The notes beneath the pieces are model-generated. The model saw nothing but the letters and a program-made list of their open reading frames with translations. It searched no databases and was not told the origin of the DNA. Positions 4,587 to 27,532 of a DNA stretch of 64,000 nt are shown piece after piece; the first letter of the stretch is position 1, and every line of letters starts with the position of its first letter. The stretch is taken from IMG/VR virus record IMGVR_UViG_3300022752_000015, positions 62,001 through 126,000 of that record, one strand, 5' to 3'. A program made the translations under genes and the position numbers.

Positions 4587-4636
4587 TTTCTACTGGCTCC
4601 ACTCTTCGTTATATATATCAAATTCTCGTAAAAATA

Positions 4637-4667
4637 AAAAAGGATCGAAACCAGCTCGATCCTTTTT
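4637..4667. terminator. Bidirectional intrinsic terminator
   Basis: AAAAAGGATCGA-N7-TCGATCCTTTTT, directly after the Hsp20 stop. Confidence 0.8.
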
Positions 4668-4686
4668 CGTTCTAAGTTTGCTGATT

Positions 4687-5040
4687 TTAGTGGACTTTAA
4701 TCTTTCTAGGCACAGATTCAGGCTTTTTTGGAAGATTTATTTCTAATAAGCCATCTTCTAATTTTGCTGTTATCGAAGATTCATCTACAGCAGAATTTAA
4801 AGAGTATGAATAAGAATATTCTTTGTTCGTTTTACTAGATTTAGCTTTTACTTTTAAACGTCTTCCTTCGACGGTGATGTCCAATTCAGATTGCTTCACA
4901 CCTGGCATTTCTAATTTAATGCTAGTTTCATCTACAGAATCTTGAACTTTTTTTTCTAATGGTCTCCCAAGATCTTCAAAAGTCTTAAAAACGTCTAGTA
5001 TGTCGTTTGAACGGTGTAAATCGTAATACCAAGTCAACAT
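4687..5040 (-). CDS. Small heat-shock protein (Hsp20/alpha-crystallin)
   Basis: LEMPGVKQSELDITVEG...ITAKLEDGLLEINLPK, the alpha-crystallin signature. Confidence 0.9.
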   Translation of the reverse strand: MLTWYYDLHRSNDILDVFKTFEDLGRPLEKKVQDSVDETSIKLEMPGVKQSELDITVEGRRLKVKAKSSKTNKEYSYSYSLNSAVDESSITAKLEDGLLEINLPKKPESVPRKIKVH

Positions 5041-5137
5041 ATCAATTCTCCTTGTTAAAACGGCTTATACGTTGGGCGCCGTCGTTAGGATATTGATAAA
5101 CATTAAAAAAAAACTGAAAAGGACCAAACTAAAAAAT

Positions 5138-5506
5138 TTAGTAACCTTTTTCTACTCTATTGAAGTTTATCTCTCCCTTTTTCATGTAAGCTTGATATAA
5201 CTCTTCAATAGAGACTCCGCTAAGTATGGCGATTTCAAAAAAGTAGTGAAGAGCATCACATAACTCTTCAACGTAACTATCACGATCAAAATCTCGTAGA
5301 TCTGTCGCACGATGATCCTTCGAATTTTTTAACAGAAGATTTGCTTCAAACAACTCATGCATACATTCATGAGTAATAGACTTCAATATCTTTTGTCCAC
5401 TTTTTGTCGAAGTGTCGACTGGAAAGCTTGGAAATTCTCTTTTTTCTCTGAGTAAATCCATGAATTGCTTTTGCTGTTTCCACATCTCATCAAGTTTATC
5501 TGACAT
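5138..5506 (-). CDS. All-alpha NTP pyrophosphatase (dimeric dUTPase / T4 gp56-like / MazG-like)
   Basis: E..HELFE...EELCDALHYF...Y..K...N..R...GY pattern. Confidence 0.75.
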   Translation of the reverse strand: MSDKLDEMWKQQKQFMDLLREKREFPSFPVDTSTKSGQKILKSITHECMHELFEANLLLKNSKDHRATDLRDFDRDSYVEELCDALHYFFEIAILSGVSIEELYQAYMKKGEINFNRVEKGY

Positions 5507-5586
5507 TATTCATCTCTTTCACCAGAAATATAAAACTTGAAACAAATCACGAACAAAGCTAAATTGATAGAAATCCAAAACATCAT
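5506..5586 (-). CDS. 26-aa hydrophobic small protein
   Basis: MMFWISINLALFVICFKFYISGERDE*. It fills the gap exactly: start 1 nt after the upstream TGA, and TAATG overlap with the next gene. Confidence 0.55.
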   Translation of the reverse strand: MMFWISINLALFVICFKFYISGERDE

Positions 5587-5587
5587 A

Positions 5588-5839
5588 TCATTCAAAGACT
5601 AACACACCTTGAGAATCTTTCTTGTCTTTAAGGCTTTCTGCTTCTGCCAAATACTTCTTATGCATTTCAGAGACTTGCAACTCATACTTTGGATCTAGAG
5701 TGACAGTGTCAGGATTCGACTCATCTACAACAAGACGGACTTGCCTCATCAGGTCAGCACCATCAACTCCCAGCAAAAGAGCCTCTTGAAAGATTTGAAT
5801 CATTCTCATTGCAACTGCATCAGAAATTTTATAGCTCAT
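5588..5839 (-). CDS. Hypothetical protein
   Basis: 83-aa ORF within the operon. Confidence 0.7.
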   Translation of the reverse strand: MSYKISDAVAMRMIQIFQEALLLGVDGADLMRQVRLVVDESNPDTVTLDPKYELQVSEMHKKYLAEAESLKDKKDSQGVLVFE

Positions 5840-5894
5840 GTTTTTTGTCCTTCATGGAAATTTAAATCATCTATCTTCGATAGTACAATCACTA

Positions 5895-6476
5895 TTAAAA
5901 ATTTAATTCGCTCAATTTGGTTCTAATCTCTTCTGCAATGACTTCACGAGGTTGAGTGCAGTCAATCACCTTACAAGAAGCCGGGTGCTCTTTTGACCAT
6001 TCTAGATAAATTCTTCTCACGTTCTCTTGCAACTCAGCATCAGATTCATACACATCTTCAGCAGAGTGTTTGTGGGCAGGACCCAACAATAAAAAGGTGA
6101 ACTCAGGTCTTCTTAACCTAGCATGTAATTTTTCAGTGAACTCAGATGGAACTCCTGTTGCTTTACCATAAACGACCGTAGATAGACTCCATCTATCCAT
6201 TATGATATAATCGTAATTTTTCTCCAGCTTTCTCAAGCTGAACCATTGAAAAATCTGTCTATTAAAATACTGTAACCACTGAAAACATTTTGGAAACTTT
6301 TTTGCTAGCCCATTCCTTAGCATCCAATAGATGATGTGATAAACAAAATTAGAACGAATAGGAACCTCAATCGTTAAGACCTTGTAACCTCTCCATGATA
6401 AAAAATTAGAAAGAAAATTTGTTTGAGTTGCTTTACCAACTCTATCAGGACCTTCGATTACTATTAGCTTGGACAT
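5895..6476 (-). CDS. tmk: Thymidylate kinase
   Basis: EGPDRVGKATQ P-loop and MDRW motif; start set at MSKLIVIEG. Confidence 0.88.
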   Translation of the reverse strand: MSKLIVIEGPDRVGKATQTNFLSNFLSWRGYKVLTIEVPIRSNFVYHIIYWMLRNGLAKKFPKCFQWLQYFNRQIFQWFSLRKLEKNYDYIIMDRWSLSTVVYGKATGVPSEFTEKLHARLRRPEFTFLLLGPAHKHSAEDVYESDAELQENVRRIYLEWSKEHPASCKVIDCTQPREVIAEEIRTKLSELNF

Positions 6477-6489
6477 AAGATTTAATCTT

Positions 6490-7149
6490 TCAAGAAAAAG
6501 GTTCTCTGATCTCACCGTTAACGACTAACCCAAAAGCTTCAAGAGTAGCAGGAAATGCTTTGGATGCTACGACAAGTTCCAACATCTGTTGTGCGATATT
6601 CCTTATCTCTAATTGAGCATGCTCAGAATACCGAAGCTTCAAAAAATGATAAAAGCTTCTAAAATTGAACATAACATCAGCAGTGATCTGATTACCATAA
6701 GGCAAATACAATCTTGCAGATTCTTTAGCACGCTTGCGTGACATACCTTTTCGCACAAGTCTATCAAGAGTTTCATGATATTTTTGTAAAGAATGATCCA
6801 TATGCATCACATATGCAATCGCTTCTTCATTATCCCAATCAACAGGAACATAGTACTTATCATCTTTCAATTCCTTGTACCTAGCTGATTCAGCATTGAT
6901 TGATACGCCAATTCTATGCTTGATTAAGTGTATGTGTGAAGCAACATCGCTGGTAACTAGAAAATGAATTGAAGATTTTTCAAAAACAGAATGGTGTTCA
7001 TTCTCAGCTAACATCTTCAACAAGGAAGGTATTCTATTCTTTTTTTCTTCAGTCAGATCTCTTGATGTTGATGTCCACGCGGAAAGCGCGTGGGTTTCAT
7101 CAGATCCGTAATACCCGATCAGCTCTACTTTATTATTTTGTGCAGGCAT
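6490..7149 (-). CDS. thyX: Flavin-dependent thymidylate synthase
   Basis: HHSVFE, KHRIGVSINAESARY (ThyX motif), ESARLYLP, NFRSFYHF, HAQLEIR. Confidence 0.95.
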   Translation of the reverse strand: MPAQNNKVELIGYYGSDETHALSAWTSTSRDLTEEKKNRIPSLLKMLAENEHHSVFEKSSIHFLVTSDVASHIHLIKHRIGVSINAESARYKELKDDKYYVPVDWDNEEAIAYVMHMDHSLQKYHETLDRLVRKGMSRKRAKESARLYLPYGNQITADVMFNFRSFYHFLKLRYSEHAQLEIRNIAQQMLELVVASKAFPATLEAFGLVVNGEIREPFS

Positions 7150-10064: not shown

Positions 10065-11501
10065 TCAACTTCCAACCGTTGTTACTGATTCTGCGTTCGA
10101 AAAGTTTCTTGAACTAGAAAATTCATTTTTCAGTTCTTTCCACTTGGCTCTTAAGGCTTTTTTCTGTTCAGCTTCGTCAGAGGCTGAAGTTTCTTCTGGC
10201 GAATCGGCTGCGCCTGTGATCTCAAATTTGCTCTGAGCAGTGTTGATCTTTGCTGGGAAAACTAGACCGTCTCGGCCAGCTCTGTTCTTGGCGACGAATA
10301 ATCTACCCCACCCAGACGCTTTCTCATGTGCTCGTCTGGAGACTGAAATGATAAAGTCGCAGATCATAGCCTTACCGTAAGCCTCAGACATATTCGTCAT
10401 GTCAATAACCTCTGCATTAGCGCCTTCTTTGTTTGACTGTGAAGCAGTCCAGATTGGAATGCCAAGCTCCATAGCAAGACCTCGAAGCTCCTCATAAACT
10501 AGCTTGAGCTCATGACGAAGAGAATCAAACTGACGCGATGATCTCATGATATCTGCATAATCAATAATAACGATATCAGGCTTAAACCCTCTTAGATCTA
10601 GTCTTTCAATGTGTGAACGAACCGTGAAAACCGATGCCGTATTTGTCGGATACTCTTTGATAAAGAGACGACCTAAGTTCATAGACTCATATTTGGACTT
10701 GACCTTATCTTTATTGTCCATCACTTCATTTGAATCTATGTCACAAAGATTTGAATCGTAACGAGTACCGACGGCTGTCTCAGATAGCTCGAAAGTGTAA
10801 TGAAGAACATTTTTACCTTCACGTAGAGCATTTGACCCAATCATGGTTAACCAATGAGACTTACCAGACCCAGATGCTCCAACAACGCAAAGCAATTCAC
10901 CTTTACCTGAACCTCCATTGAGGATTTCTTTCTTATCAAGTTCAGGAATTCCTGTTGGGATAGTATCTCGTTTTAACCGTGTGAACCGCGCTTCTAACTC
11001 ATTGAAAAAATCATGACCGACAGATGGAGCTGTTCCAACCTGGACAGCTCGCTTGATTGTTTCAACAATAGATTCATACTTATTGGCTTGCATTTGATCG
11101 ACAGCATTCTCAAGAGCTGCTTTCAATGCCTGCTTACGACAAAAATCAAGAGATTTCTCTCTTACAAATTGAAGATCTCCAGGATCAGGATTCGCCTTCA
11201 TGCGCTGGAGGTATTCTATAATTTGATCTCTTAGAATCGTGTCCGTTCCAACCTTCAAATCTTCTCGAATGATTGTGACAAGTAATTGTAATGTAGGAAA
11301 AACCTTGTACTTCTTCGAATAAGAGAAGTAGCGATCAGCTAGAAATTGCAGATACTTCAGCTCAAAATAAGAAGTGTCAAAAACTTCCATCATTTGTTCT
11401 GCAAATTTCGAGTCAGTCAAGAGAGCCTGCATGATCTTCTCTTGAAAAGACTTACCGTAAGATCCAAAGGTTAACTTGTTTTTATTTTCGTTTTCTAACA
11501 T
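10065..11501 (-). CDS. Replicative helicase (DnaB / T4 gp41-like)
   Basis: Walker A GASGSGKS, Walker B IIDYAD, TASQSN, SEAYGK, KNRAG. Confidence 0.93.
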   Translation of the reverse strand: MLENENKNKLTFGSYGKSFQEKIMQALLTDSKFAEQMMEVFDTSYFELKYLQFLADRYFSYSKKYKVFPTLQLLVTIIREDLKVGTDTILRDQIIEYLQRMKANPDPGDLQFVREKSLDFCRKQALKAALENAVDQMQANKYESIVETIKRAVQVGTAPSVGHDFFNELEARFTRLKRDTIPTGIPELDKKEILNGGSGKGELLCVVGASGSGKSHWLTMIGSNALREGKNVLHYTFELSETAVGTRYDSNLCDIDSNEVMDNKDKVKSKYESMNLGRLFIKEYPTNTASVFTVRSHIERLDLRGFKPDIVIIDYADIMRSSRQFDSLRHELKLVYEELRGLAMELGIPIWTASQSNKEGANAEVIDMTNMSEAYGKAMICDFIISVSRRAHEKASGWGRLFVAKNRAGRDGLVFPAKINTAQSKFEITGAADSPEETSASDEAEQKKALRAKWKELKNEFSSSRNFSNAESVTTVGS

Positions 11502-11502
11502 T

Positions 11503-12474
11503 TTAGTTACCAGTCACGTATTTCGCGCTGTCAATACAGTTCATTGAATAAAAAAATGCCTCAACATCAAAATCGTTGATTCCTTCTTTGAGGAGGGCTT
11601 TGATCAATCCGATCTTATTAACGTGCGGAACGAATGTATCTAACGTATGTTGCACTTTAGAAATTTGAGATGCTGACAACATACTACCATCTAGGTATAC
11701 CAATCTCCAATTTCTGTTGATCAAATCTTGATTGTCTACGACCTTCTTATAAACAGTAGATTCTCCAATCCTGGATTGACAAAACGAAATGATGTCCTCT
11801 ATCAAGAGATCATCATCTGTTCCCAATATAGGAAGTTTTTTAGAAACCGTCTTAAACCCCAACCCTTTTACTCCAGGAATGTTATCTCCAGGATCTCCAC
11901 ATAACGCCTTGGCGGCTGCGAAGTTGTTGGGTTTTATTCGGAATTCTTCAAAGACGTCATCAACTGTCAAGACTTTTTTCTTATGAAGAGAATAGATCGA
12001 AGTATTTGCATCCAACAGTTGATACATGTCTTTGTCGGAAGAAACTATGATCTTTTTATTTTGCTTAAATGGCCCCGAACAAAGAAACGCAACTATGTCA
12101 TCACCCTCGCAATCAGAGGCGTAAACTTGGCAAACAGGAGAATTTTTTAGCATGTTCAATAGAGAAATAAGCTGATGTTTCCTGTTCTCTTCTGACTCAG
12201 GTATATCATCTCCGTAAAAACGGTTGAGCTTCTCAGGACGTCTACCAAGCTTATATTCAGGATAAATTGATCTACGTCTTAGAGAACCCCCGCCTTCCCA
12301 TGCCACGCAAATCATTGAAGGTTGTAACTCAGTTGTGATTCTTTTCAACGTCTTAAGAAAACCGATGCAACCTCCCATTTGATAGCCATGGGTCGACATT
12401 TGTGGGTATGCCGCCCATGACCTAATAAAAAGATTTGCTCCATCAATAACCAAGATGGGACGATCTGAACTCAT
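11503..12474 (-). CDS. 5'-3' exonuclease / flap endonuclease (T4 RNase H-like)
   Basis: IDGANL, EGDD, SSDKD, GDPGDNIPGVKGLG (H3TH). Confidence 0.92.
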   Translation of the reverse strand: MSSDRPILVIDGANLFIRSWAAYPQMSTHGYQMGGCIGFLKTLKRITTELQPSMICVAWEGGGSLRRRSIYPEYKLGRRPEKLNRFYGDDIPESEENRKHQLISLLNMLKNSPVCQVYASDCEGDDIVAFLCSGPFKQNKKIIVSSDKDMYQLLDANTSIYSLHKKKVLTVDDVFEEFRIKPNNFAAAKALCGDPGDNIPGVKGLGFKTVSKKLPILGTDDDLLIEDIISFCQSRIGESTVYKKVVDNQDLINRNWRLVYLDGSMLSASQISKVQHTLDTFVPHVNKIGLIKALLKEGINDFDVEAFFYSMNCIDSAKYVTGN

Positions 12475-12767
12475 GTTTTGCCTGTAGAACCGAATCCACC
12501 ACTGCCGCGGGTCGTTGAAGACAAACTGTTGGTTGGTTGGAATATCCCACGAAAAACTCGAGAAAATACCAACTGTGCAATCCTATCGCCTTTATTGACA
12601 ATAAATTCTTCGTCACCTGTGTTCAACAAAATGACCTTAATTTCCCCTCGATAGTCACAATTGTGAACAAGAACATCATTACAAAAAAAATTGTGATTAT
12701 TTTCTACTGTAAGATCATAACATCGTTCATTATGCGTTGTTTTATTTTTAATTTTTACAAACTTCAT
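12471..12767 (-). CDS. dut: Split-intein C-half (36 aa) fused to dUTPase C-extein (62 aa)
   Basis: MKFVKIK...CYDLTVENNHNFFCNDVLVHN|CDYRGE...GDRIAQ...RGSGGFGSTG. ATG 12767 follows GGAG-A6; Asn/Cys junction at 12660/12659. Confidence 0.93.
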   Translation of the reverse strand: MKFVKIKNKTTHNERCYDLTVENNHNFFCNDVLVHNCDYRGEIKVILLNTGDEEFIVNKGDRIAQLVFSRVFRGIFQPTNSLSSTTRGSGGFGSTGKT

Positions 12768-13674
12768 TTTTTTCTCCAAAAAAATTAATGATATATTTTT
12801 TCGATTCATCAAGGCTAAAAGACAAAAAATAGCGTGCATTAATGCTAAAGGCGAACAATTCAGCAGATGAACTTTTTCTTTCTATTTTATTATCGTTGAA
12901 GCTAAATCCTTTTAGCTCTAAAATGCATTTTTTGTCATCGTTGTAGATGTAAAAATCAGGAATGTAACGTCTTGTTTTATTGTTTTCATCGATATAAGAA
13001 ATTTTATACCCATGAGCTTTTGTCCATGAAAGCGATGTTGTGTCAAGAAATGTCATTAATTCAAGTTCCCAAGAAGAATCGTAAAATTCTTTTGATCCTA
13101 TCTTAGTAAGATACCACCCTTTTTTGTATCTATTTGATGATCCACAACGACCTTCTAAAATAGCTTCAGAAACACCTTCACTAATCTTTTGTCTCCATTG
13201 CTCTTTTCTTTCATCCGTCCATGACAGACGAAATTTAAATTCATCAGAGACGTGTTCTTTCATAAAATCACTATGATTTTTTAGATAATCATGAGTTTCT
13301 TTTGTGCGACCTGTCAAAAGCGCAGAATTTCTTTTTCCAACCGCAGCAACACGTTCATCATCATGCTTTGTAAGTCCATCATTCCAGTTTTTATGACCGT
13401 TTGCATATGTGTTTGATATTATTTCAGATTGTTTTTTTCGAAATGCATCCGTTCTATGAGTAACTTGACGAGATTCGCACATCTTCTTGTGATAGTCGGG
13501 ATTGGACCAAACATTACGATTGTTTTTTGAGACCAACTCTTTTGCTTCAAGAGATTTTACTTCTGCATCTTTGAACCGCAGTCGATATTCTTTTGTTGAT
13601 ATTTTGTGAGTATTACGAAGATGCTCAACTATAGAAAACTTCTTTTCTAGATTACAAATTAGACATTTCACCAT
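12748..13674 (-). CDS. Putative homing endonuclease: C2H2-like Zn finger, NUMOD-like repeats, PD-(D/E)XK (TnsA-like) domain
   Basis: CLIC...HLRNTH; WNDGLTK; DSSWE...YIPDF...ILELKG; visibly AT-rich; lies between the intein halves. Confidence 0.82.
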   Translation of the reverse strand: MVKCLICNLEKKFSIVEHLRNTHKISTKEYRLRFKDAEVKSLEAKELVSKNNRNVWSNPDYHKKMCESRQVTHRTDAFRKKQSEIISNTYANGHKNWNDGLTKHDDERVAAVGKRNSALLTGRTKETHDYLKNHSDFMKEHVSDEFKFRLSWTDERKEQWRQKISEGVSEAILEGRCGSSNRYKKGWYLTKIGSKEFYDSSWELELMTFLDTTSLSWTKAHGYKISYIDENNKTRRYIPDFYIYNDDKKCILELKGFSFNDNKIERKSSSAELFAFSINARYFLSFSLDESKKYIINFFGEKNEVCKN

Positions 13675-13679
13675 GATAA

Positions 13680-14219
13680 TTAAGTATCATGGTCAATTAC
13701 AATTTCATCATCATATGATAGCTCATCAGCTCTTTTAAGCCCATCTCGAGTATAAATCATCGTTCCTGGAGTTACGCACAGTTCTGTGTCATCATCAAAA
13801 ACAAATTTGATTACATCTTTTTCACCTACATCAACAATTGCGCTTATCACATCGCTTTCGACACAAAGAGTCTGTTCATTCATAGAAAACACGACATCAT
13901 TTATCTTCAAATCAAATACTTGCTTTTTTCCAGCAGGAGTTGAAATCAAACAATTTGAAGTAAAACAATCTACTGTTCCTGGAGAATTAAGAACAGTGAT
14001 ACCATATTTGGCAGCTAACCCAGATCTAGGTCTGACTTGGGCTTCAAATCCAGGAGGCAGTTCAATCTTTAACCCAGTCGCTACAGTAGCCCTTTGACCA
14101 GGTTTGATCATTAGGTACTCGTTAGCGTATACGTCGCACCCTGCTGATCCTTGAGTCTGATACTTAGGCACCAGATCATCGTCATCCACTTCACATCGAA
14201 TCCAGAATATATCACTCAT
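13680..14219 (-). CDS. dut: dUTPase N-extein (84 aa) fused to split-intein N-half (95 aa)
   Basis: AGCDV, RPRSG, GTVD then intein block [14 protein letters not shown] and block B-like [11 protein letters not shown]; stop at 13680; Cys1 at 13967. Confidence 0.93.
13681..13687 (-). promoter_or_regulatory. ATACTTA candidate promoter motif overlapping the IntN stop codon
   Basis: GAT ACT TAA (D-T-stop) contains the motif; the endonuclease ATG follows 6 nt later. Confidence 0.45.
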
Positions 14220-15387
14220 CGGATACCCCTCCTTCACCGTCTCCGTCGCCAGAAGGTTCTCCGCCGATCGTTACAAGAGCAGAATCGATAGCCGTCAAAA
14301 GATGACTGCGATATTTTTCATCTTTCAGCATGTCGCCAAATTCTGATTTATAGAATTTTTTCTCTACGACAACTTCTCCTGTTTTTGAATTGATGACCGA
14401 AAGTTCTTTCCAAGCTCCTTCGCCTGAAACATTAATCTCAAGACCATCTCTTTTCACAGGACCATTGGCTTTACAGTGTGAACGAATCTCATCAAAAAGG
14501 TATTCATCTTCGACAATTCCTTTACCGAAGATAATATCGAACTCGCATTTTCTAAATGGAGCTGCTACCTTATTCTTCTTGATGGTTGCAATAACGTGAA
14601 TACCCACTACGTTACCATTTTTGTCTTTTACTTGAGTACCTGAACTAAGCTTAATCCGCACTGAGGCATGGTAAGGTATGCTTTTACCGCCGGGCGTGAC
14701 ATCAGGATCTCCGTGCATTACTCCAATGGCAGTCCTCAATTGATTTAAACACAAAAGAGTTACATTGTTCTGTCCAATGACGCCCGTGATTTTTCGCATA
14801 CCCTTGGAAATAACTCGGGCTTGAAGACCTATTGTGTTGTCTTCATACTCTCCATCTAATTCTTGTTTCGGCGAGGTTGCTGCAACAGAATCCCAAATAA
14901 CTAAAATTGGAATATTCTTATCTACTACTTGTTTTGCTTTTAAGATCGTAGATTCGATGATAGAAAAAACCTCTTCAGTACAATGAGAATCGCAATAGAC
15001 AAACCTTTTGCGAACATCGATTCCCATGTTCGCTAGCTTTTGAACAGGGACAGAATTTTCTGTATCTACGTAAACCACAAGACCGCCCATGCTCTGAACT
15101 ATTGATGCTGCATGGTATGCTAGATGAGATTTTCCAACCGAAGGAGTTCCAGAGATTTCTATGATCCTACCTTCGGGGTACCCGCCTCCTAGAAAATTTC
15201 TAATCGCGTAATTTAGTTGAATAGATCCCGTGTCTATCCAACGCTTCACGATTGTAGGAGCGTCCATTTCTGCTAGATTGTAAGCAATTCTAGTCCCAAA
15301 CTCTTTATTGATATCTCTAATAAGCTCAGCAGCAAAATCTACCTCTAATTTTTTTGATGATTGTGCGTCTTCTTTTGCTTTAGCCAT
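14212..15387 (-). CDS. recA: RecA/UvsX recombinase
   Basis: [52 protein letters not shown]. Confidence 0.95.
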
Positions 15388-15421
15388 GTTTTCTTTATTA
15401 TCCAATTAACAATAAAATAGT

Positions 15422-15459
15422 TCAAGCGCCGGGGATTTTTTAATTTCCCCGGCGCTTGA
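15422..15459 (-). terminator. Intrinsic terminator-like hairpin after SSB
   Basis: Perfect 14-bp GC-rich arms TCAAGCGCCGGGGA / TCCCCGGCGCTTGA. Confidence 0.7.
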
Positions 15460-15469
15460 TATCGCTACA

Positions 15470-16309
15470 TCACTCGTCGCCCATCAGGTCGGCGAATGCA
15501 TCATCTAAAGATTGCTTCTTAGGAGCATCGTCGTCTACTTTCTTAGGTTTCTTCGGCTTCTCTGGAGATGAAGCTTTTACCTCTGCTACTAGATCCTCAA
15601 GAGCATCCGCAGTCACTGGGCCGCGGGTCGTCTCTGTTGGAGTATCATCTGTAGCTCCGCCGTTGAGCCAATTATTGAGAACGGCCTCGATCTCCTGAGT
15701 GGACTTTAGACGATACATGTCGTCGATGTTTGGAATGTTCTCCAACCAGGTCGCCATGGTCTTCTGATCCTCATGAAGCTTTGAAGGACGACGGGCAGGA
15801 TCCACCATCGTGTCATTGAACTGTTTACCTGGGGCTTTTGAGATCGTTACCTTCAGATCAAACCCCTGATTAGGATCCAAGATGTCGCCAACCTCCTCAT
15901 CAAGGAAGAAACCAAGCATACGTTGGTAGACGATCTTACCGAATGCCCAAACCTGTACACCCTTGTCCTCCTCACCACGAACGATGACAGGAGCATAGCA
16001 ACGCATCTTGGGGGCGAGCTTCTTTGCAAGGACTCGATCATCAGGCTTGCCGCTGCTGTACAGCTTTCGAATCAGATCGTTGATCGGATCCGGCTTTCCA
16101 AACTGATTTGGTGCCAGAAGACCTGCATTCTCTCCAATGTAATAGAACCACCTCTCGGCGAAGGGTTGGCCCTCAGGAGCATTCTTCCATGGAAGACAAC
16201 GAATCTTGTATTCTCCGATTTGTGGCTTCCACATCTGGACTGATGACGTCTTCTTCACACCACTGAGTTCTGCCACGCGACGCTTGATTGCTTCTAGATC
16301 GATTGCCAT
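15470..16309 (-). CDS. Single-stranded DNA-binding protein (T4 gp32-like)
   Basis: WKP..GEYKIRCLP...YAPVIVRGEEDKGVQVWAFGK...GFDLKV; acidic tail DDAFADLMGDE; adjacent to recA. Confidence 0.85.
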   Translation of the reverse strand: MAIDLEAIKRRVAELSGVKKTSSVQMWKPQIGEYKIRCLPWKNAPEGQPFAERWFYYIGENAGLLAPNQFGKPDPINDLIRKLYSSGKPDDRVLAKKLAPKMRCYAPVIVRGEEDKGVQVWAFGKIVYQRMLGFFLDEEVGDILDPNQGFDLKVTISKAPGKQFNDTMVDPARRPSKLHEDQKTMATWLENIPNIDDMYRLKSTQEIEAVLNNWLNGGATDDTPTETTRGPVTADALEDLVAEVKASSPEKPKKPKKVDDDAPKKQSLDDAFADLMGDE

Positions 16310-16560
16310 GTTATTTTCCTTTTCCGTTTCCGCTGTGAATGAAACACCCTTGACGAATCCGCAACATGCGAACCAAGTCTTGGTTGGACATTCAAGTCAT
16401 TCTTAAACTAAGCCAGGGTAAACGAGATGTATCGTTTTATTATTCCTGACGTCAACTTTGCACGATGCCGATTCGACAGAGCAAGTTTTATTTTTAATTC
16501 CCATGTCCAGTCCGTTTCCGCATCGAACAAGTCGATGGTATAAATATTGCAGAATCGCAA
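16310..16560 (-). ncRNA. Candidate structured leader RNA upstream of SSB
   Basis: About 250 nt with no convincing ORF, at least 4 perfect hairpins, and an 11-nt direct repeat at both ends. Confidence 0.4.
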
Positions 16561-16562
16561 TT

Positions 16563-16871
16563 TTAGGCTGCCATCATTGCGACGCCGATCAACGACACCA
16601 AAAATCCTGCTATCTGCAACGGGGTGAGTCTGTCACCTAAGATCATGAAGCCGATGACGAAAGCAGCCGTGTAAAGAACGTCAACAAGAACGGACATGAG
16701 GCTCAGGTTTTCCGACCTCTTCGCGATCCACCCCCATAAGAATCCACTTGCGATAGAAGGGAATATGGGGACCCAAATGGGTAACTCAGATGCCTGTACT
16801 TTTTTCGTGATGAATGCTCCTACAATGCCTATCACGAATAGAACGGCATATGGTAGAAATAAGCTTTTCAT
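16563..16871 (-). CDS. Small multi-pass membrane protein (SMR/EamA-like, DMT superfamily)
   Basis: Four hydrophobic segments; C-terminal ILGDRLTPLQIAGFLVSLIGV resembles DMT signatures. Confidence 0.65.
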   Translation of the reverse strand: MKSLFLPYAVLFVIGIVGAFITKKVQASELPIWVPIFPSIASGFLWGWIAKRSENLSLMSVLVDVLYTAAFVIGFMILGDRLTPLQIAGFLVSLIGVAMMAA

Positions 16872-16872
16872 G

Positions 16873-17103
16873 TCACTTCCAGGCCGGTTGTTTTCTCTTC
16901 TTTCTTTCTTTAACTTTAGGAGACTCCATGTCTTTACTCGTCCATCCTAAAGGAGCGGTAAAACCCGCTATTGCGCCTACGCCGCTAAATTCGTTGATGT
17001 CATCAGAATCTGACTTTGGTTCTTTTTCGTCTTCATCTTCATCAATCTTCAAGCTTGATTCTTTTATGATCTCTAGAACATAACGGCGTAGTAAGTCGTT
17101 CAT
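16873..17103 (-). CDS. Hypothetical protein (LLRRYVLEIIKES N-terminus)
   Basis: 76-aa ORF with an acidic middle and EFSGVGAIAGFTAPLG. Confidence 0.7.
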   Translation of the reverse strand: MNDLLRRYVLEIIKESSLKIDEDEDEKEPKSDSDDINEFSGVGAIAGFTAPLGWTSKDMESPKVKERKKRKQPAWK

Positions 17104-17108
17104 GCTGC

Positions 17109-17115
17109 TAACTAT
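17109..17115 (-). promoter_or_regulatory. ATAGTTA candidate promoter motif
   Basis: 5 nt upstream of ATG 17103. Confidence 0.4.
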
Positions 17116-17708
17116 TCGTCAATCATCTCTTTTTCTTGCTTCGTCGCAAGATAATCAGCCGTTTGTACGACGTGAACGAGGTTCGATTCCTTTAGACAGT
17201 AGGCTTTGTTTTCCTGAAGAACCCATCCATCGTTCAACATGATGGAAAGCCACTCATCTTGAGTGAGGCGCAGACCGAATTGCTGACACAACCAAACGCC
17301 TCGATGAGGAACAGTCATGTACTTGATATTTTTGTTGTGTTTGTAGGTCTCACCCAACTTATCTCTATGCCAATCTGAGTCTTGGGGCAGGTAATAATCT
17401 TGTTCCAGATCTCCCAGCTTTCCTGCATCGTGAAAGAGACACCCGATGATCAGAGAATCCTTTGGCAAATCATATTCAAATGCCTTACACAACTTCATTG
17501 CATTGCTGAGAACACGAAGAGAATGATCCACCAAACCTCCGGGTTCTGCCAAATGAAATTCTTTTCTGCCTGAAGCAGGACATAAAGCCAATCTCTCGCC
17601 GAAATGATCGACTAGAGACAGGGCGGCAGCGGATCGATCTCCTAACCTCTCACACAGAGATCGAAATTTGTCAAAGTTTGAAGCAATTTTCTCAGGACTT
17701 AATGTCAT
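17112..17708 (-). CDS. HD-domain hydrolase (YhaM-like)
   Basis: FHLAEPGGLVDHS...LFHDAGK...ADYLA. Confidence 0.85.
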   Translation of the reverse strand: MTLSPEKIASNFDKFRSLCERLGDRSAAALSLVDHFGERLALCPASGRKEFHLAEPGGLVDHSLRVLSNAMKLCKAFEYDLPKDSLIIGCLFHDAGKLGDLEQDYYLPQDSDWHRDKLGETYKHNKNIKYMTVPHRGVWLCQQFGLRLTQDEWLSIMLNDGWVLQENKAYCLKESNLVHVVQTADYLATKQEKEMIDE

Positions 17709-18991: not shown

Positions 18992-21900
18992 TTACTTTTT
19001 CTGCGCGTTGCGGGCGGCCTGGGCATTGATCCCAGCAGTAACAGTGCTTAATTGCGTGGTCAACCCGTCGACCACCGATTGAGCTCCTTCGAACGTTCCA
19101 TATGCGTCAGCAAAGGCTAGCTTCAGCTCTGTCGTGAACTTTCCAGGAGACATGTTGTGATTCAGGCTGATGACGTTGTAGAGGTTGTCAACAGTCGTAC
19201 CAGTGTTTAGATCTATAAAGAATTGTTGCATGTATTCGAGTATTGGGCAACCCATCGTCGTCAACGACATGGTGCCCTGCACGACTCTCATCGGCAGATC
19301 TCCAGCCCCCGAACCGTTGGGTTCCGAAGGGTTCGCCGCGTCGGAAGTGTTCCTGAGCATCATGATGGTGGACAGCAACGCGTCTTGGTTCGTGGAATAG
19401 TTCACGTTAGAGATCATTGTGCCGTTTGATCCCACATTCAGGGTGGGAACCAGGCGCGAGATCTCTCTCTTTATGACCTCAAAGCTAGGAGCCGATTTGC
19501 CATCTTCACCACGAGGTTTTATAAATCTCGCCTTATACTTCACGTTGGCGCCCGGGAATCGCTTGTTGATGATTGATTCAGCCTCAGTGAGCGTCTGCTG
19601 GGCGGTCAATCCTGTTTTCTTTTCAATTTCCGCTTTCGCGGCGTCGAGCTGACCAGCATTCGCCTTCATTTGAGCCGAGTTTTCATCCGATACTACTCTG
19701 GTGCCCGTCTGCTGACCAATATCATTCTCGACAGCGACGTATCCTAGACCGCTCGCAGCTTTCATGTAAGTCTCGGCGGTTTGATGAGGGGTCGCCGCGC
19801 GGTCATAAATGTGGATTCTCATGATGCGCGTCTGACCTCGGGCCTTGAACCTCCCGTCAGATTCGTTGGCCGCAATCGTGTACTTTTCTAACAGATCAGT
19901 CGTGCTGTGTTGGGATCCCTTTGACAAGGTTTCAATGTAAAAATCCACCATTGGTAACAAGAATGGACCATCTGCACCCCAGTTGTCGATTGCCAATTTA
20001 GAGATGGTCGTGTTGGCTTTTTCATCCTTTGCGACTAAAGTTCCATTCGTCTTGTCGACCTTGTATTGATCGCTGAACCCATACGCGCGATTCTTCATGT
20101 CACCAAACTGAGATTCTCTAACGATCTCCATGAAAGAAGAAAACGACATTCGATCGCCCTTTTGTTGCTTGACCCTTTTTGCATAAGCAGATTTCAAAGT
20201 CGGCACGTCGATCGGGAACTCAGCTATGTTCAAACCACGAGCCTTGCCTGCCCGATGATTTAATTTATAGAAAATGACCTGAAACTCATCCACCACGTTG
20301 CCGGCCATGGCGCGGGCCAGGGCGGCGAAGTATACAGCAAAAACCTTCCCAAACGAGTTTGTACCGTAATCACCATACACCAAAGCCTCAGCGGTCTCAG
20401 AATAATCTCTTTGTCCTGGGCTGTTATTCATTATATCAAGCAGAGGATGTTTCGTGAGAGCTGGTTTATCTTCCGCAAACTTTTTTGCGTCTTTCACCAC
20501 GGCAAAGAAGTCTTTCGCTTTCGCAAGCTCAGAGAATCTCTCTGCAGAGGTTGCATTCGCCTGTTTGGCAAGCTCTGTCTCCGCGTTATTTGCAGGAGAA
20601 TAAAGCTTTTTTAGCAGTCCCAGAAATTCTTCTTTAGTTGCCGCGTCACCACTCTTGCTACTATTAAGAGCGTTTGTCAATCCGGCTATTTCAGCATTCA
20701 GAGTCTTCGTGTCCGCAGTCGACAAGTTTCCAGAATTAACAGACGACATCAACACTGAACCACGGATGTCAGGAGCTGCGGCGTAGATGGCAGGCAAACC
20801 TAGGCGAGCTGCTAGCTCTTGTATTCTACTTATGTCGGCGGCGAGCTTCTGCTGGAACACGTCAAAGCTGTTGGAGATAGCGTCTGGACTTGAGATTATC
20901 ACCTCATTGCCTCCTTGAGATGATAGAGAAAGAGTCACCGTCGCCACGCCGTTGCTATCTATCTGTATGCTAGAGTTGATGACTCCGTACGCTTCTCTCT
21001 TTAGCATTGTTTCATTGATGAAACGAAAGTAAGGATTGTCCTGCGACGGATCATCCGGAGGAAGCGCAGGTGCACGCCACCCATACGTCACCCAAATCGT
21101 CGTGGACTTGTACAGCTTAGGGCTGATGAAATCGGCTATCTCGACCAACCTAGATCTGTCAAATATCTTCAACGTCATCTTCGCCGTCTTGAAAGAGAAC
21201 GTTCCGACCGAAGATTGGACGTTGACAGAAAAATCCGTGATGGTTCCAAAAGGTAACATGGGATTGATGACAGGGTGATACCTAGGACTTGCTGTCTGAT
21301 CATAATCCATATTGATCAGTGTCTGAGGCATGGTGAACATCTCCATACCCGTCACTGTCGTGAAAGCTCCTGAGGGTTTTGGATCAGGAGTCGTGTTGCT
21401 TGTCTCCTTGAGTAATTGTGGTTCTTTTGGCGGAGTAATTTTTTTCTTTTCATCAGGAGATTTAAGATTGTACAATCTTAATTGAAATTCGTATTGCTGT
21501 CTCAGCTGTGCGTTTTGTCGCTTGACCCAGTTCACCTTCTCTACACCGGCTGAGTTAAAGAAGTTGTTCCTTGTCATCGCGTCGTAGATCATCGCGTTCG
21601 CGGTGAGAGGTTTGTTCTTATCAGGTATCGTCGACGTGTCAGCGCCCAACAAGAACTTAAGGGGGCTCATCGTCATCAAGGGACGATTCGTGGCCGTCGT
21701 GTTTTTATCGTTGTTCCGGTGCAACGTGAACTCAGCCGAAAGGTAAGGCACAAGCTGTGATGCGATGATGCCAGGCACGTAATTTAGAAACGTCTCGGCC
21801 TTGTCTGCGTTGCGAAGTTTCAAGTCAATATTGGGAGCGTCGACGAGGAGGTATGTCAACTCTGGATAAGGTATCTCAGTTGAATCACCGGCGAGCTTGG

Positions 21901-22297
21901 GGATCATCAAATCGAAGTTACCTTCTTTATAGGTACCGTCGTTGTCTAGGTAGGTGTATGCAGACGGTCTTCCATTCCTCGCATACCACTGTGCGATACT
22001 TTCCGCGCCACTATTGCCGTTCTTGTCTCCAACGTTCGTCGTGTACACTCTAAAGAGCTTTGCGAGCGTTCTGCTTTTTTCTTCATCTTTTCCCGCAAGC
22101 TCTTTGAGCTTGGCAAATATCTCAGCGCCGTTGAGAACTTTATCATTATTTTGAAGCAGAATGTTGCGTAAAGCTGTAAACATGTCTTCCGTGGCGCCTT
22201 TGACCCCGGACAAGGACGCTTGCTTTTGTGAGCCGAGAACGTCGACTGTCTCGAAACTGCGATAAAGATCTGCGATGTTATCGAATTTAAAAGCCAT
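18992..22297 (-). CDS. Large baseplate hub-like virion protein
   Basis: Follows tape measure, tube-initiator-like and LysM-like genes. The C-terminal TMGCP..QQFFID..TGTT.DN.Y...H...PGKFTT pattern resembles gp27/late-control-D hubs. Confidence 0.5.
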   Translation of the reverse strand: MAFKFDNIADLYRSFETVDVLGSQKQASLSGVKGATEDMFTALRNILLQNNDKVLNGAEIFAKLKELAGKDEEKSRTLAKLFRVYTTNVGDKNGNSGAESIAQWYARNGRPSAYTYLDNDGTYKEGNFDLMIPKLAGDSTEIPYPELTYLLVDAPNIDLKLRNADKAETFLNYVPGIIASQLVPYLSAEFTLHRNNDKNTTATNRPLMTMSPLKFLLGADTSTIPDKNKPLTANAMIYDAMTRNNFFNSAGVEKVNWVKRQNAQLRQQYEFQLRLYNLKSPDEKKKITPPKEPQLLKETSNTTPDPKPSGAFTTVTGMEMFTMPQTLINMDYDQTASPRYHPVINPMLPFGTITDFSVNVQSSVGTFSFKTAKMTLKIFDRSRLVEIADFISPKLYKSTTIWVTYGWRAPALPPDDPSQDNPYFRFINETMLKREAYGVINSSIQIDSNGVATVTLSLSSQGGNEVIISSPDAISNSFDVFQQKLAADISRIQELAARLGLPAIYAAAPDIRGSVLMSSVNSGNLSTADTKTLNAEIAGLTNALNSSKSGDAATKEEFLGLLKKLYSPANNAETELAKQANATSAERFSELAKAKDFFAVVKDAKKFAEDKPALTKHPLLDIMNNSPGQRDYSETAEALVYGDYGTNSFGKVFAVYFAALARAMAGNVVDEFQVIFYKLNHRAGKARGLNIAEFPIDVPTLKSAYAKRVKQQKGDRMSFSSFMEIVRESQFGDMKNRAYGFSDQYKVDKTNGTLVAKDEKANTTISKLAIDNWGADGPFLLPMVDFYIETLSKGSQHSTTDLLEKYTIAANESDGRFKARGQTRIMRIHIYDRAATPHQTAETYMKAASGLGYVAVENDIGQQTGTRVVSDENSAQMKANAGQLDAAKAEIEKKTGLTAQQTLTEAESIINKRFPGANVKYKARFIKPRGEDGKSAPSFEVIKREISRLVPTLNVGSNGTMISNVNYSTNQDALLSTIMMLRNTSDAANPSEPNGSGAGDLPMRVVQGTMSLTTMGCPILEYMQQFFIDLNTGTTVDNLYNVISLNHNMSPGKFTTELKLAFADAYGTFEGAQSVVDGLTTQLSTVTAGINAQAARNAQKK

Positions 22298-22300
22298 CTA

Positions 22301-22600
22301 TCACCCTATGAGAACTGACACTGCGTTTAGATCTGGCACTACGATCACCGTTCCTGGCGGTAGCTGCAATCCCCACCCTATTTCGCTGGCAGCTGCAAGA
22401 ACCCACCAGTATCTCGAATCCTTGTAATAAGTTGCAGCCAGGTGATCCAACCTTTGATTTCCTTGTAACGTCACCGTGTCGATGATCGGAAGCGCACCTT
22501 CGGCGAGAGCGGCTCGAATGGTGGCCACGGCGCGTGACGTTCCGAACTGTTCGTTGAAACCTAACCTAGGAGACCCTCTATACCTACTGAATATCGCCAT
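22301..22600 (-). CDS. LysM/gpX-like baseplate protein
   Basis: RLDHLAATYYKDSRYWWVLAAAS...LPPGTVIVVP. Confidence 0.7.
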   Translation of the reverse strand: MAIFSRYRGSPRLGFNEQFGTSRAVATIRAALAEGALPIIDTVTLQGNQRLDHLAATYYKDSRYWWVLAAASEIGWGLQLPPGTVIVVPDLNAVSVLIG

Positions 22601-22606
22601 AGCTTT

Positions 22607-27208: not shown

Positions 27209-27216
27209 GGAATGAC

Positions 27217-27498
27217 CTACCCTTTCGATCCAGAATTGATGGGTGAACCATCGCTTTCTTTAATTATGCCCTCACCACTTTTCAGAGCCTCTGAAATCTT
27301 GGACGCGGCAGCTGGATCTTGTTTCATCTGGGCCATCGCCGGAATGATAGCCTCGTAGAGCGTGCCTAGCATGTATTCCACCGTCCTTAATGCCTTCGCA
27401 GCATCGAGGGCGTTCGGTGCCTTCTTGAGAACGGCCGCCACCTCAGGATCCTCGCGAAAACGCTTCAACAACTCGTCCTTTGAACCAATGTCTTTCAT
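27217..27498 (-). CDS. Hypothetical protein
   Basis: 93-aa ORF between tape measure and the 1533-aa gene. Confidence 0.65.
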   Translation of the reverse strand: MKDIGSKDELLKRFREDPEVAAVLKKAPNALDAAKALRTVEYMLGTLYEAIIPAMAQMKQDPAAASKISEALKSGEGIIKESDGSPINSGSKG

Positions 27499-27532
27499 GA
27501 TGCCACATTATAACGCGGTCGGACAGACGAGA

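What the first reader, a model, noticed from the sequence alone, without database searches (positions are those of the whole stretch)
13683..13967. The N-intein lacks the near-invariant block-B histidine
Seen: block B reads [12 protein letters not shown] (ACT CCA GGA ACG), so TxxH has become TPGT. Cys1, the block-F Asp and His (YDL, NHNF) and the HN|C end are canonical. Known: the block-B His drives the N-S acyl shift in class 1 inteins; rare exceptions such as Tko CDC21-1 have Thr there and use a compensating residue. Inference: this is either a split intein with a compensatory mechanism or a slow, conditional or decaying one, in which case dUTPase supply could be regulated by splicing.
Basis: partly seen in the sequence, partly recalled or inferred. 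Interest (0 to 1): 0.6.

Follow-up and report, generated by a model that had tools for sequence, protein, structure and literature searches.

The report
Histidine-less split intein in phage dUTPase
A lake phage's dUTPase gene is split by a mobile split intein that, like about 50 related dUTPase inteins, lacks the histidine regarded as the most conserved intein residue yet looks fully functional, so this family probably starts protein splicing in a different way.

Summary
Window 13683-13967 (minus strand) encodes a 95-residue N-intein fused to the N-half of a dUTPase. Its block B reads T-P-G-T, so B10 is Thr (codon ACG, 13761-13763), not His. Alignments to Ssp DnaB and NrdJ-1 inteins place this Thr on their B10 His. 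No other His in the N-intein can substitute.

This is not a decaying allele. It is the normal state of a whole family. Of 52 dUTPase-hosted split N-intein clusters, 51 lack His (T32, S7, Q7, K5). All 36 full-length split relatives in other host proteins have His.

The locus is a "fractured gene": dUTPase-N plus IntN, a free-standing zinc-finger/PD-(D/E)xK endonuclease gene, then IntC plus dUTPase-C. All other catalytic residues are kept. In a sister group, IntN, IntC and the endonuclease gene are under purifying selection (dN/dS about 0.04-0.3). The 1311-bp element is base-for-base identical in diverged phage backgrounds and occurs in at least 20 lake metagenomes. Modelling supports IntN-IntC binding (0.78 against 0.01 for the best control).

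Best reading: an active class-1-type trans-splicing intein lineage that no longer needs B10 His. How it compensates is inferred, not shown. I found no evidence for regulation of dUTPase supply.

The parts
13968..14219 (-). dUTPase N-extein (84 residues, M-S-D-I-F-W ... G-T-V-D). It ends with the motif III Asp, which is the -1 residue of the intein.
   Evidence: Pfam dUTPase E 1.7e-12 over residues 17-85. It is 100% identical to the N-half of the intein-less dUTPase P0008.
13683..13967 (-). N-intein (IntN), 95 residues. Cys1 is at 13965-13967, B7 Thr at 13770-13772 and B10 Thr (in place of His) at 13761-13763. The stop codon is at 13680-13682.
   Evidence: Translation. Hint_2 and Hint Pfam hits fall below the cut-off. 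PDB phmmer hits to Ssp DnaB and NrdJ-1 inteins give the block B alignment.
12748..13674 (-). Free-standing putative homing endonuclease gene (308 aa plus stop). It has an N-terminal C2H2-type zinc finger (C-x2-C-x12-H-x4-H) and a C-terminal PD-(D/E)xK nuclease domain (E-L-E ... P-D-F ... E-L-K).
   Evidence: Weak Pfam hits to TnsA-like_N and ROS/MucR. PHROG endonuclease 5.9e-10. The motifs are conserved in homologues at the same position in 7 other loci. AF2 model: nuclease domain pLDDT 82-95. Foldseek best hits are TnsA (9bw1_M 2.6e-4, 1t0f_B), Bax1 and Hjc.
12774..12777 (-). Shine-Dalgarno-like GGAG 6 nt upstream of the IntC start codon, inside the 3' end of the endonuclease ORF.
   Evidence: Read directly from the sequence. 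The IntC ORF overlaps the endonuclease ORF by 20 nt.
12660..12767 (-). C-intein (IntC), 36 residues. F4 Asp is at 12714-12716. F13 His lies in N-H-N-F-F. The end is penultimate His then Asn (V-H-N).
   Evidence: Translation. Pfam Intein_splicing 7.2e-7, below the cut-off. PDB phmmer alignments to NrdJ-1, gp41-1, Ssp DnaB and others. Predicted complex with IntN scores 0.78 against 0.01 for the best control.
12474..12659 (-). dUTPase C-extein (62 residues). It begins with Cys+1 (12657-12659) followed by D-Y-R-G-E of motif III. The stop codon is at 12471-12473.
   Evidence: Pfam dUTPase E 5.9e-17. It is 98% identical to the C-half of intein-less P0008, differing at C-D-Y versus E-D-F.
12657..13967 (-). 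The whole inserted element (1311 bp: IntN, endonuclease gene, IntC and the Cys+1 codon). A single Glu codon stands in its place in intein-less alleles.
   Evidence: blastn of the window against the intein-less loci L003-L007. There are zero differences to L002 across the element, while the flanks diverge by 20-30%. There are zero differences in contigs from 4 lake metagenomes.

Best explanation
This is a 'fractured' dUTPase gene of a large freshwater phage. A mobile element has split it. The element comprises a naturally split class-1-type intein and a free-standing zinc-finger/PD-(D/E)xK homing endonuclease gene. After translation, IntN (on the dUTPase N-half) and IntC (on the C-half, with its own ribosome-binding site) associate. 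They then trans-splice the halves into a dUTPase that carries Cys where intein-less alleles carry Glu in motif III. The missing block-B His is not a defect of this allele. It is the ancestral, fixed state of nearly the whole dUTPase-hosted split-intein family, where B10 is always a polar hydrogen-bonding residue (Thr, Ser, Gln or Lys). The N-S acyl shift at Asp(-1)|Cys1 must therefore be activated without His. My inference for the window's Thr type has three parts. First, the retained B7 Thr and F4 Asp contribute. Second, the B10 hydroxyl contributes a hydrogen bond. Third, the invariant non-glycine Asp(-1) side chain of dUTPase motif III adds strain or hydrogen bonding. The third part is analogous to the rescue of Ssp DnaB H73A by larger -1 residues. 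Shown here: the anatomy, the family-wide loss of His, purifying selection, recent mobility and the predicted IntN-IntC association. Inferred only: that splicing actually occurs, and which groups replace the His. The confidence given is for the main claim (a functional intein lineage in which B10 His is dispensable). The specific compensating groups are much less certain, about 0.35.
For: Anatomy. B10 alignment to solved inteins. Family-wide state: 52 dUTPase-hosted split IntN clusters read T32, S7, Q7, K5, H1, while 36 of 36 split relatives in other hosts read His. The dUTPase-hosted inteins form one clade (SH-like support 0.84). Catalytic residues are kept: Cys1 in 45 of 45, and B7 Thr in 41 of 45. 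HN|Cys+1 and F13 His are kept in almost every IntC seen, with F4 Asp, or His in the Lys type. Purifying selection in the sister Thr/Ser group: for pairs where dS could be estimated, dN/dS is 0.08-0.28 for IntN, 0.00-0.27 for IntC and 0.10-0.31 for the endonuclease gene. Recent mobility: there are 0 differences to L002 in the 1311-bp element and only 2 in 11400-14110, against 20-30% divergence outside. Contigs from 4 independent lake metagenomes show the same pattern. The stretch occurs in at least 20 lake or freshwater runs from 18 studies, 2017-2025. The fractured gene is the only dUTPase in the 212.8-kb record. IntN-IntC complex model: ipSAE 0.78, best of 3 controls 0.01. That mark was reached by 51 of 78 solved complexes and 2 of 108 mismatched pairs. 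Runs agree in at least 94% of contacts and partner pLDDT is at least 76. Precedents: Friedel 2019 (PMC6333167) showed that -1 side chains larger than Ala rescue H73A of Ssp DnaB M86. Tko CDC21-1 splices without B10 His (PMC4031507).
Against: There is no biochemical evidence of splicing for any family member. dN/dS was measured in a sister subgroup (L008-L019), not in the window's own subclade, where the available pair is identical. No clade-specific basic or other obvious compensating residue was found in IntN. Residue-level 3D proximity could not be examined because the tools return no coordinates. An acidic -1 residue is not sufficient to make His dispensable: many His-bearing relatives sit after Glu(-1) in helicase D-E motifs. 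The complex model may score high from memory of solved split inteins. Support for monophyly of the Thr/Ser group is weak (0.17). The genome record is only about 59% complete, so a second dUTPase cannot be excluded.
Confidence: 0.72

Rival explanations
1. The intein is decaying or catalytically dead. The two halves serve at most as a non-covalent docking module, or the dUTPase is simply lost. Loss of B10 His would be the first lesion.
For: B10 His is essential in many inteins, and one of the two His-less inteins known in 2014 is a pseudogene (PMC4031507). Phage genes split by endonuclease genes can be reassembled non-covalently (title and abstract of PMC3045599, listed). An intein-less allele shows that the intein itself is dispensable.
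Against: His is absent in 51 of 52 diverged clusters, while Cys1, HN and Cys+1 stay invariant and B7 Thr, F4 and F13 stay largely conserved. dN/dS is 0.04-0.3 on both intein halves. All three ORFs are intact in every locus inspected. The element is still spreading. The insertion sits directly after the catalytic Asp of motif III, where an unspliced 131-residue appendage is unlikely to be tolerated (inference).
Confidence: 0.1
2. The intein splices, but slowly or only under certain conditions such as redox state. Splicing would then regulate dUTPase supply during infection.
For: Loss of His lowers rates in some inteins (PMC6333167). This allele is Cys-rich: Cys1, IntN Cys6, Cys35 and Cys64, IntC Cys16 and Cys29, and Cys+1. 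Disulfide switches are known in other inteins (cited in PMC4031507).
Against: None of the extra cysteines except IntC Cys29 is conserved across the Thr/Ser type. By hairpin register Cys29 lies near the tip of the F/G hairpin, away from the active site (inference). An intein-less allele whose 84-residue N-extein is identical exists in nature, so no regulatory role is required. The selfish homing signature explains the element's persistence. No RNA or protein data are available.
Confidence: 0.12
3. The intein uses a different nucleophile pathway, class-3-like, through the Cys two residues upstream of F4 (IntC Cys16). That would make B10 His unnecessary.
For: IntC of the window and its subclade reads R-C-Y-D. 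F2 and F4 point to the same face of the strand (inference).
Against: The class 3 W-C-T signature is absent: B12 is Ile, F4 is Asp and G5 is Val. Cys1 is invariant. F2 is Thr, Val or Ile in most of the family. Even the atypical class 3 AceL NrdHF intein needs its B10 His (PMC7891396).
Confidence: 0.03

Closest known systems
Fractured genes with naturally split inteins and a free-standing homing endonuclease gene (Dassa et al. 2009, PMC2677866; e.g. gp41-1, NrdJ-1, IMPDH-1)
   Same: The layout is the same: host N-half plus IntN, a free-standing endonuclease ORF, then IntC plus host C-half. The origin is phage or metagenomic. The split is at the canonical endonuclease-insertion site. IntC is about 36 residues. 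NrdJ-1 is among the best PDB sequence matches for both halves.
   Different: The host protein is dUTPase, which is not among the host types that paper names (no mention of dUTPase). B10 His is absent here, whereas NrdJ-1 has T-P-D-H. The endonuclease here is a C2H2 zinc finger plus a classical PD-(D/E)xK, TnsA-like domain, not GIY-YIG. It shows no Vsr-like motif.
Ssp DnaB mini-intein M86 H73A rescued by bulky -1 residues (Friedel et al. 2019, PMC6333167; PDB 6FRE, 6FRG, 6FRH)
   Same: It is the closest solved sequence relative of IntN (E 6.5e-4). It shows that a class 1 intein of this lineage can perform the N-S acyl shift, and even splice, without B10 His when the -1 residue is larger than Ala. 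Here the -1 residue is an invariant Asp.
   Different: That case is an engineered mutant of a cis or artificially split intein whose native -1 residue is Gly. Asp was not among the -1 residues named in the passages I read. Here the His-less state is natural, ancient and family-wide.
Tko CDC21-1 intein and orthologues (Tori et al. 2012, as summarised in PMC4031507 and PMC6333167)
   Same: It is a natural class 1 intein lacking B10 His that still splices by a compensatory mechanism. Its -1 residue is also non-glycine (Leu).
   Different: It is an archaeal cis-splicing intein in CDC21/MCM, and its compensation was assigned to Lys58 outside the conserved blocks. No equivalent conserved Lys is seen in the Thr-type dUTPase inteins. 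The host, domain of life, split state and mobility apparatus all differ. Homology beyond the HINT fold was not tested.

Membership tests
Class 1 intein (HINT splicing domain) | N-terminal nucleophile (Cys, Ser or Thr at position 1) | tested here: met
   Cys1 follows G-T-V-D. It is invariant in 45 of 45 family members.
Class 1 intein (HINT splicing domain) | Block B T-x-x-H: Thr at B7 | tested here: met
   Thr150 of P0001 aligns to B7 of Ssp DnaB and NrdJ-1.
Class 1 intein (HINT splicing domain) | Block B T-x-x-H: His at B10 (the most conserved intein residue) | tested here: not met
   Thr153 occupies B10. No alternative His is present in IntN. 51 of 52 dUTPase-hosted relatives also lack it.
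Class 1 intein (HINT splicing domain) | Block F: Asp at F4 and His at F13 | tested here: met
   IntC reads Y-D-L-T-V-E-N-N-H-N-F-F and aligns to block F of gp41-1, NrdJ-1 and Ssp DnaB.
Class 1 intein (HINT splicing domain) | Block G: penultimate His, terminal Asn, and a +1 Cys, Ser or Thr | tested here: met
   V-H-N followed by Cys, then D-Y-R-G-E.
Class 1 intein (HINT splicing domain) | Significant match to curated intein/Hint profiles | tested here: inconclusive
   Hint_2 scores 22.9 bits against a cut-off of 28.4. Intein_splicing scores 29.6 against 35.8. The halves are short, and PDB phmmer hits to inteins reach E 1e-4 to 1e-3.
Class 1 intein (HINT splicing domain) | Protein splicing activity | not testable with these tools
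   Only indirect evidence is available: selection, conservation and the predicted complex.
Naturally split intein in a fractured gene (Dassa 2009 arrangement) | IntN and IntC lie on separate ORFs fused to the two halves of one host protein, with a free-standing endonuclease ORF between them | tested here: met
   ORFs at 13680-14219, 12748-13674 and 12471-12767. The same layout is seen in L002, L008-L019, L083 and L085, and in L087 with an HNH endonuclease; L014 and L021 also carry separate IntN and IntC ORFs, but their spacer ORF was not examined.
Naturally split intein in a fractured gene (Dassa 2009 arrangement) | The two intein halves associate | tested here: met
   This is a model, not a measurement. 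ipSAE is 0.78 against 0.01 for the best of 3 controls. That mark was reached by 51 of 78 solved complexes and 2 of 108 mismatched pairs. Contact agreement is at least 94% and partner pLDDT at least 76.
Class 3 intein (W-C-T) | Trp at B12, Cys at F4 and Thr at G5 | tested here: not met
   B12 is Ile, F4 is Asp and G5 is Val.
Class 2 intein | No N-terminal nucleophile (Ala1) | tested here: not met
   Cys1 is present and invariant.
Tko CDC21-1-type His-less inteins | A compensating Lys (Lys58) outside the conserved blocks that activates the N-junction | not testable with these tools
   No structure coordinates or CDC21-1 alignment were available. No clade-specific conserved Lys stands out in IntN.

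The most novel reading that the evidence does not exclude
The dUTPase-hosted split inteins are a mechanistically distinct subclass of class 1 inteins in which the N-S acyl shift does not depend on the block-B His. In the Thr/Ser type (this window), the extein's own catalytic Asp(-1), together with the B10 hydroxyl, would take over hydrogen bonding or proton transfer at the scissile amide. That would be substrate-assisted splicing. In the Lys type, the whole T-x-x-H motif is replaced by P-K-x-K and a His appears at F4 of IntC, so the catalytic His would have migrated from block B to block F. The family would then record several independent solutions to the same catalytic problem. It would also supply new orthogonal split inteins.
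Probability: 0.35. Interest if true: 0.75.

Novelty: new variant of a known kind. Interest (0 to 1): 0.62.

Why it matters
[quoted passage not shown] A 2014 review counted only two inteins without it, one of them a pseudogene (PMC4031507). [quoted passage not shown]

Here a large, diverse, actively mobile family of natural split inteins lacks it. The family spans about 50 clusters at 50% identity or less. It uses four different replacement residues, and one subfamily has also lost B7 Thr and gained His at F4.

If these inteins splice, three things follow:
- They give a natural system for asking what the His really does in the N-S acyl shift.
- They test the idea from engineered Ssp DnaB mutants that the -1 extein residue can take over its role.
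- They add dUTPase to the hosts of fractured genes, and add small (95 + 36 residue) split inteins that may be orthogonal to existing tools.

For phage biology, the locus is also a clean example of ongoing homing. The element is identical in backgrounds that differ by 20-30% a few hundred bases away.

Tried and rejected
- **Another His at B10.** Rejected. The only IntN His is in the non-conserved C-terminal tail at the split site.
- **A compensating residue specific to the His-less clade.** I compared IntN columns between 45 dUTPase-hosted and 36 other split inteins. The clear differences are at B10, at B11 (Lys/Arg in the others; Glu, Leu, Pro or Met here) and at Asp39 of IntN (44 of 45 here against 18 of 36). 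In the complex model the strand that carries Asp39 pairs with IntC residues 20-21. By that strand register (my inference) Asp39 would lie opposite about Glu22, several residues from F4. It is therefore not an obvious catalytic substitute.
- **Cys in N-F-F-C-N of IntC.** It co-occurs perfectly with Thr/Ser-type IntN in 10 of 10 paired loci. By hairpin register it lies next to the turn, far from His25 and Asn36, so it is probably structural.
- **Covariation of B5 Cys with F2 Cys (a possible disulfide).** Rejected. P0006 has Thr at B5 while its probable partner P0139 keeps Cys at F2.
- **Class 3 mechanism.** Rejected (see the membership test).
- **Searching IMG/VR with an intein-only alignment.** It failed because no stretch was conserved enough. 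A whole-protein alignment worked.
- **The IntC partner of the single His-bearing dUTPase intein (P0357).** It could not be recovered because the contig ends inside the endonuclease gene. Two Lys-type contigs were also too short.
- **Literature.** No paper holds both 'split intein' and 'dUTPase'. Papers holding 'intein' with 'dUTPase' or 'deoxyuridine' are, by title or on reading, unrelated. Tori et al. 2012 is not held.
- **Isolated phages.** No record in the GenBank phage collection carries a dUTPase-hosted IntN.
- **Sequencing runs.** No RNA run holds the stretch, so expression could not be examined. No intein-less joint appeared in the four runs laid.

Full report
**1. What is at the coordinates**

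On the minus strand, three consecutive ORFs occupy window 12471-14219.
- The first (13680-14219, P0001) encodes 84 residues of dUTPase ending G-T-V-D, then a 95-residue N-intein that starts at Cys1. Pfam dUTPase scores E 1.7e-12 on the dUTPase part.
- The second (12748-13674, P0003) is a 308-residue free-standing protein.
- The third (12471-12767, P0002) encodes a 36-residue C-intein ending V-H-N, then Cys+1 and the dUTPase C-half (Pfam E 5.9e-17).

The finding's coordinates, 13683-13967, are exactly the IntN coding sequence. IntC has its own GGAG 6 nt before its ATG, inside the 3' end of the middle ORF.

The window lies in a 212.8-kb IMG/VR virus record that CheckV rates at 59% complete. The neighbours form a phage replication module: gp32-like SSB, UvsX-like recombinase, 5'-3' exonuclease, DnaB-like helicase and RNR large subunit. 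The fractured gene is the only dUTPase in the record.

**2. The observation**

Block B reads [13 protein letters not shown]7 Thr is ACT at 13770-13772 and B10 Thr is ACG at 13761-13763.

phmmer against PDB sequences aligns this stretch without gaps to the Ssp DnaB mini-intein (1mi8, A-T-a-N-H-r-f-L-T) and to NrdJ-1 (8ubs, C-T-P-D-H-p-v-Y-T). The downstream D-G-x-K-R-x-D-E-L anchor fixes the register. B10 is therefore Thr.

The single His of IntN lies in the last four residues, at the split site. It is conserved only in the nearest relatives. F4 Asp, F13 His, penultimate His, terminal Asn and Cys+1 are all present.

**3. This is a family trait, not an allele defect**

A full HMMER scan of 1.84 billion representatives with IntN found 153 relatives. 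A word-indexed search with the whole protein added more.

I aligned all hits locally. Fifty-two clusters are dUTPase-hosted. Each is inserted at the same site, after the motif III Asp. Nearly all end within 0-6 residues of the end of IntN (two end 9 and 15 residues after it), so they are split.
- B10 in these 52 clusters: Thr 32, Ser 7, Gln 7, Lys 5, His 1 (P0357).
- B10 in the 36 full-length split relatives in other hosts (mostly D-E-x-x helicases and radical-SAM-like proteins): His in all 36.

In a FastTree of IntN, the dUTPase-hosted inteins form one clade (support 0.84). The Lys type has support 0.95 and the Gln+His type 0.82. The large Thr/Ser group is monophyletic but weakly supported (0.17). 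The lone His-bearing member nests among the Gln types, and His and Gln codons are one base apart.

B10 is never hydrophobic, Ala or Gly in this family. That suggests the position still does hydrogen-bonding work (inference).

**4. N/C pairing and other remodelling**

I recovered paired loci from IMG/VR and other assemblies.
- **Thr/Ser type:** IntN pairs with IntC of the form x-Y-D-[IL]-T-V..N-H-N-F-F-C-N..L-I-H-N|C, with F4 Asp, in 10 of 10 loci.
- **Lys type:** B7 Thr is lost too (block B reads P-K-x-K). It pairs with IntC carrying His at F4 (Y-H-[LM]-T-V) in 2 of 2 loci (L021, L087). Seven or more further IntC clusters show F4 His.
- **Gln type:** it keeps F4 Asp, and one member lacks F13 His (L014).

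According to a 2014 review, F4 is most commonly Asp, then Cys, then Trp (PMC4031507). F4 His is therefore unusual in its own right.

**5. Evidence that the intein is functional**

- **(a) Conservation.** Cys1 is present in 45 of 45 members. Thr10, Gly13 and Ser28 are nearly invariant or invariant. B7 Thr is present in 41 of 45. HN|Cys+1 is present in every IntC seen.
- **(b) Selection.** Among seven loci of the sister Thr/Ser group, and for pairs where dS could be estimated, Nei-Gojobori dN/dS is 0.08-0.28 for IntN, 0.00-0.27 for IntC and 0.10-0.31 for the endonuclease gene. This includes pairs with unsaturated dS of 0.3-1.0.
- **(c) Association.** The complex test supports binding but does not show it. 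The score is 0.78 and the best of 3 controls is 0.01. That mark was reached by 51 of 78 solved complexes and 2 of 108 mismatched pairs. Runs agree in at least 94% of contacts and partner pLDDT is at least 76. Similarity to solved split inteins may contribute to the score. The interface includes residues 153-158 (block B) and 83-88 (the N-junction).
- **(d) Persistence.** The stretch is held by at least 20 lake or freshwater metagenome runs from 18 studies, 2017-2025.

**6. Evidence that the element is a mobile homing element**

Intein-less alleles (L003-L007) carry one Glu codon where the window carries 1311 bp, at 12657-13967. P0008 is 100% identical in the N-extein. In the C-extein it differs at E-D-F against the window's C-D-Y.

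Against L002, which comes from another sample, the element has 0 differences. The tract 11400-14110 has 2 differences, while the surrounding genes differ by 20-30%.

In contigs from four further lake metagenomes, no difference is listed between 12595 and 14109. Differences cluster from 14110 outwards, and the contigs become unlike the window beyond 12311 and 14303. This is the pattern expected from recent endonuclease-driven homing with short co-conversion tracts.

The middle ORF has a C2H2-type zinc finger and conserved E...P-D...E-x-K motifs. Its nuclease domain is modelled with confidence (pLDDT 82-95). The model resembles TnsA, Bax1 and Hjc (Foldseek 9bw1_M E 2.6e-4; Pfam TnsA-like_N, weak). 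Other subfamilies carry other endonucleases: HNH in L087 and a Y-W-H-containing type in L085. Endonuclease genes have therefore been exchanged or acquired repeatedly.

**7. Mechanism**

*Shown:* the anatomy, the family-wide loss of His, purifying selection, mobility and the predicted association.

*Inferred:* the halves trans-splice by the class 1 route (Cys1 thioester, Cys+1 trans-thioesterification, Asn cyclisation), and the first step is activated without His. For the window's type, the groups left near the N-junction are B7 Thr, the B10 Thr hydroxyl and F4 Asp.

The one feature common to every member is the invariant Asp(-1), imposed by dUTPase motif III. IntN's closest solved relative is Ssp DnaB. 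In its M86 variant, -1 side chains larger than Ala restore the N-S acyl shift, and even splicing, to the H73A mutant by distorting the scissile bond. The authors note that the natural His-less Tko CDC21-1 group has Leu(-1) (PMC6333167).

I therefore favour a model that combines strain from the -1 side chain with polar contacts from B7 and B10. Asp(-1) may also act directly on the Cys1 amide.

Two points count against a simple 'acidic -1' explanation. His-bearing relatives sit after Glu(-1). And I found no clade-specific compensating residue in IntN. The tools return no coordinates, so proximity could not be checked.

**8. Comparison with what is known**

- The arrangement is the 'fractured gene' of Dassa et al. 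2009. That paper does not list dUTPase as a host, and its inteins have B10 His.
- Reviews call B10 His the most conserved intein residue. One counted only Tko CDC21-1 and a pseudogene without it (PMC4031507; PMC10663303).
- Even the atypical split class 3 AceL NrdHF intein needs it (PMC7891396).
- Class 2 and class 3 membership fail on defining residues.
- I found no paper on dUTPase split inteins. No isolated-phage record carries one. The library does not cover subscription journals, so prior description cannot be excluded.

**9. Verdict**

The second alternative (decay, or conditional splicing that regulates dUTPase) is not.

I classify this as a new variant of a known kind: a class-1-type, naturally split, phage-borne intein family that has dispensed with B10 His.

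Operator notes were followed. Read laying received 2101 letters. No alternative genetic code was used.

Noticed in passing
L021:3225-3507 and 4635-4746; L087:3001-3666 and 4533-4844: A Lys-type subfamily of dUTPase split inteins has lost the whole T-x-x-H motif (block B reads P-K-x-K). Its IntC carries His instead of Asp at F4 (Y-H-L/M-T-V) in both paired loci. This may be a case of the catalytic His moving to another block.
   Followed up: partly
L014:4383-4488: The IntC of a Gln-type dUTPase intein lacks the F13 His (it reads N-N-S-N-Y) while keeping F4 Asp and H-N|C. This is a second departure from the canonical set in the same family.
   Followed up: no
window 10700-17200 compared with L002: The similarity is mosaic. 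There is near-identity over 11400-14110 (exonuclease gene, fractured dUTPase) and again over about 16200-17200. The helicase, UvsX-like and gp32-like genes in between differ by 20-30%. This fits recombination tracts centred on the homing element.
   Followed up: partly
L005, L006, L007 (about 840 bp between the matches to window 12532 and 12447): Intein-less relatives carry an extra insertion of about 840 bp at or just after the 3' end of the dUTPase gene that the window lacks. It may be another mobile gene.
   Followed up: no
L087:1-1954 and 4863-6666: The phage contig with the Lys-type dUTPase intein is intein-rich. A neighbouring 724-residue product hits LAGLIDADG_3, and the adjacent IMPDH gene has a Hom_end_hint hit. 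The endonuclease between its dUTPase halves is an HNH type, unlike the window's.
   Followed up: no
window 12748-13674: The free-standing endonuclease pairs a C2H2 zinc finger with a TnsA-like PD-(D/E)xK domain. The two are joined by a long helical, low-confidence linker (residues 89-183, pLDDT below 50). It has no sequence match in the PDB, and its best PHROG family has no assigned function.
   Followed up: partly
PDB 6y75 and 6tmm, matched by window 12660-12767 (IntC): A solved HINT-like chain, annotated as NAD(P)(+)--arginine ADP-ribosyltransferase, has His at the position aligned to F4 (I-Y-H-I-Q-V-E-N-N-H-N-F-F-A-N). It also appears to keep a block-B His. It could serve as a structural reference for the F4-His subfamily.
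   Followed up: no
window 18992-32722: Very large minus-strand ORFs (1101, 1533 and 1729 aa) lie downstream of the replication module. I did not examine them.
   Followed up: no
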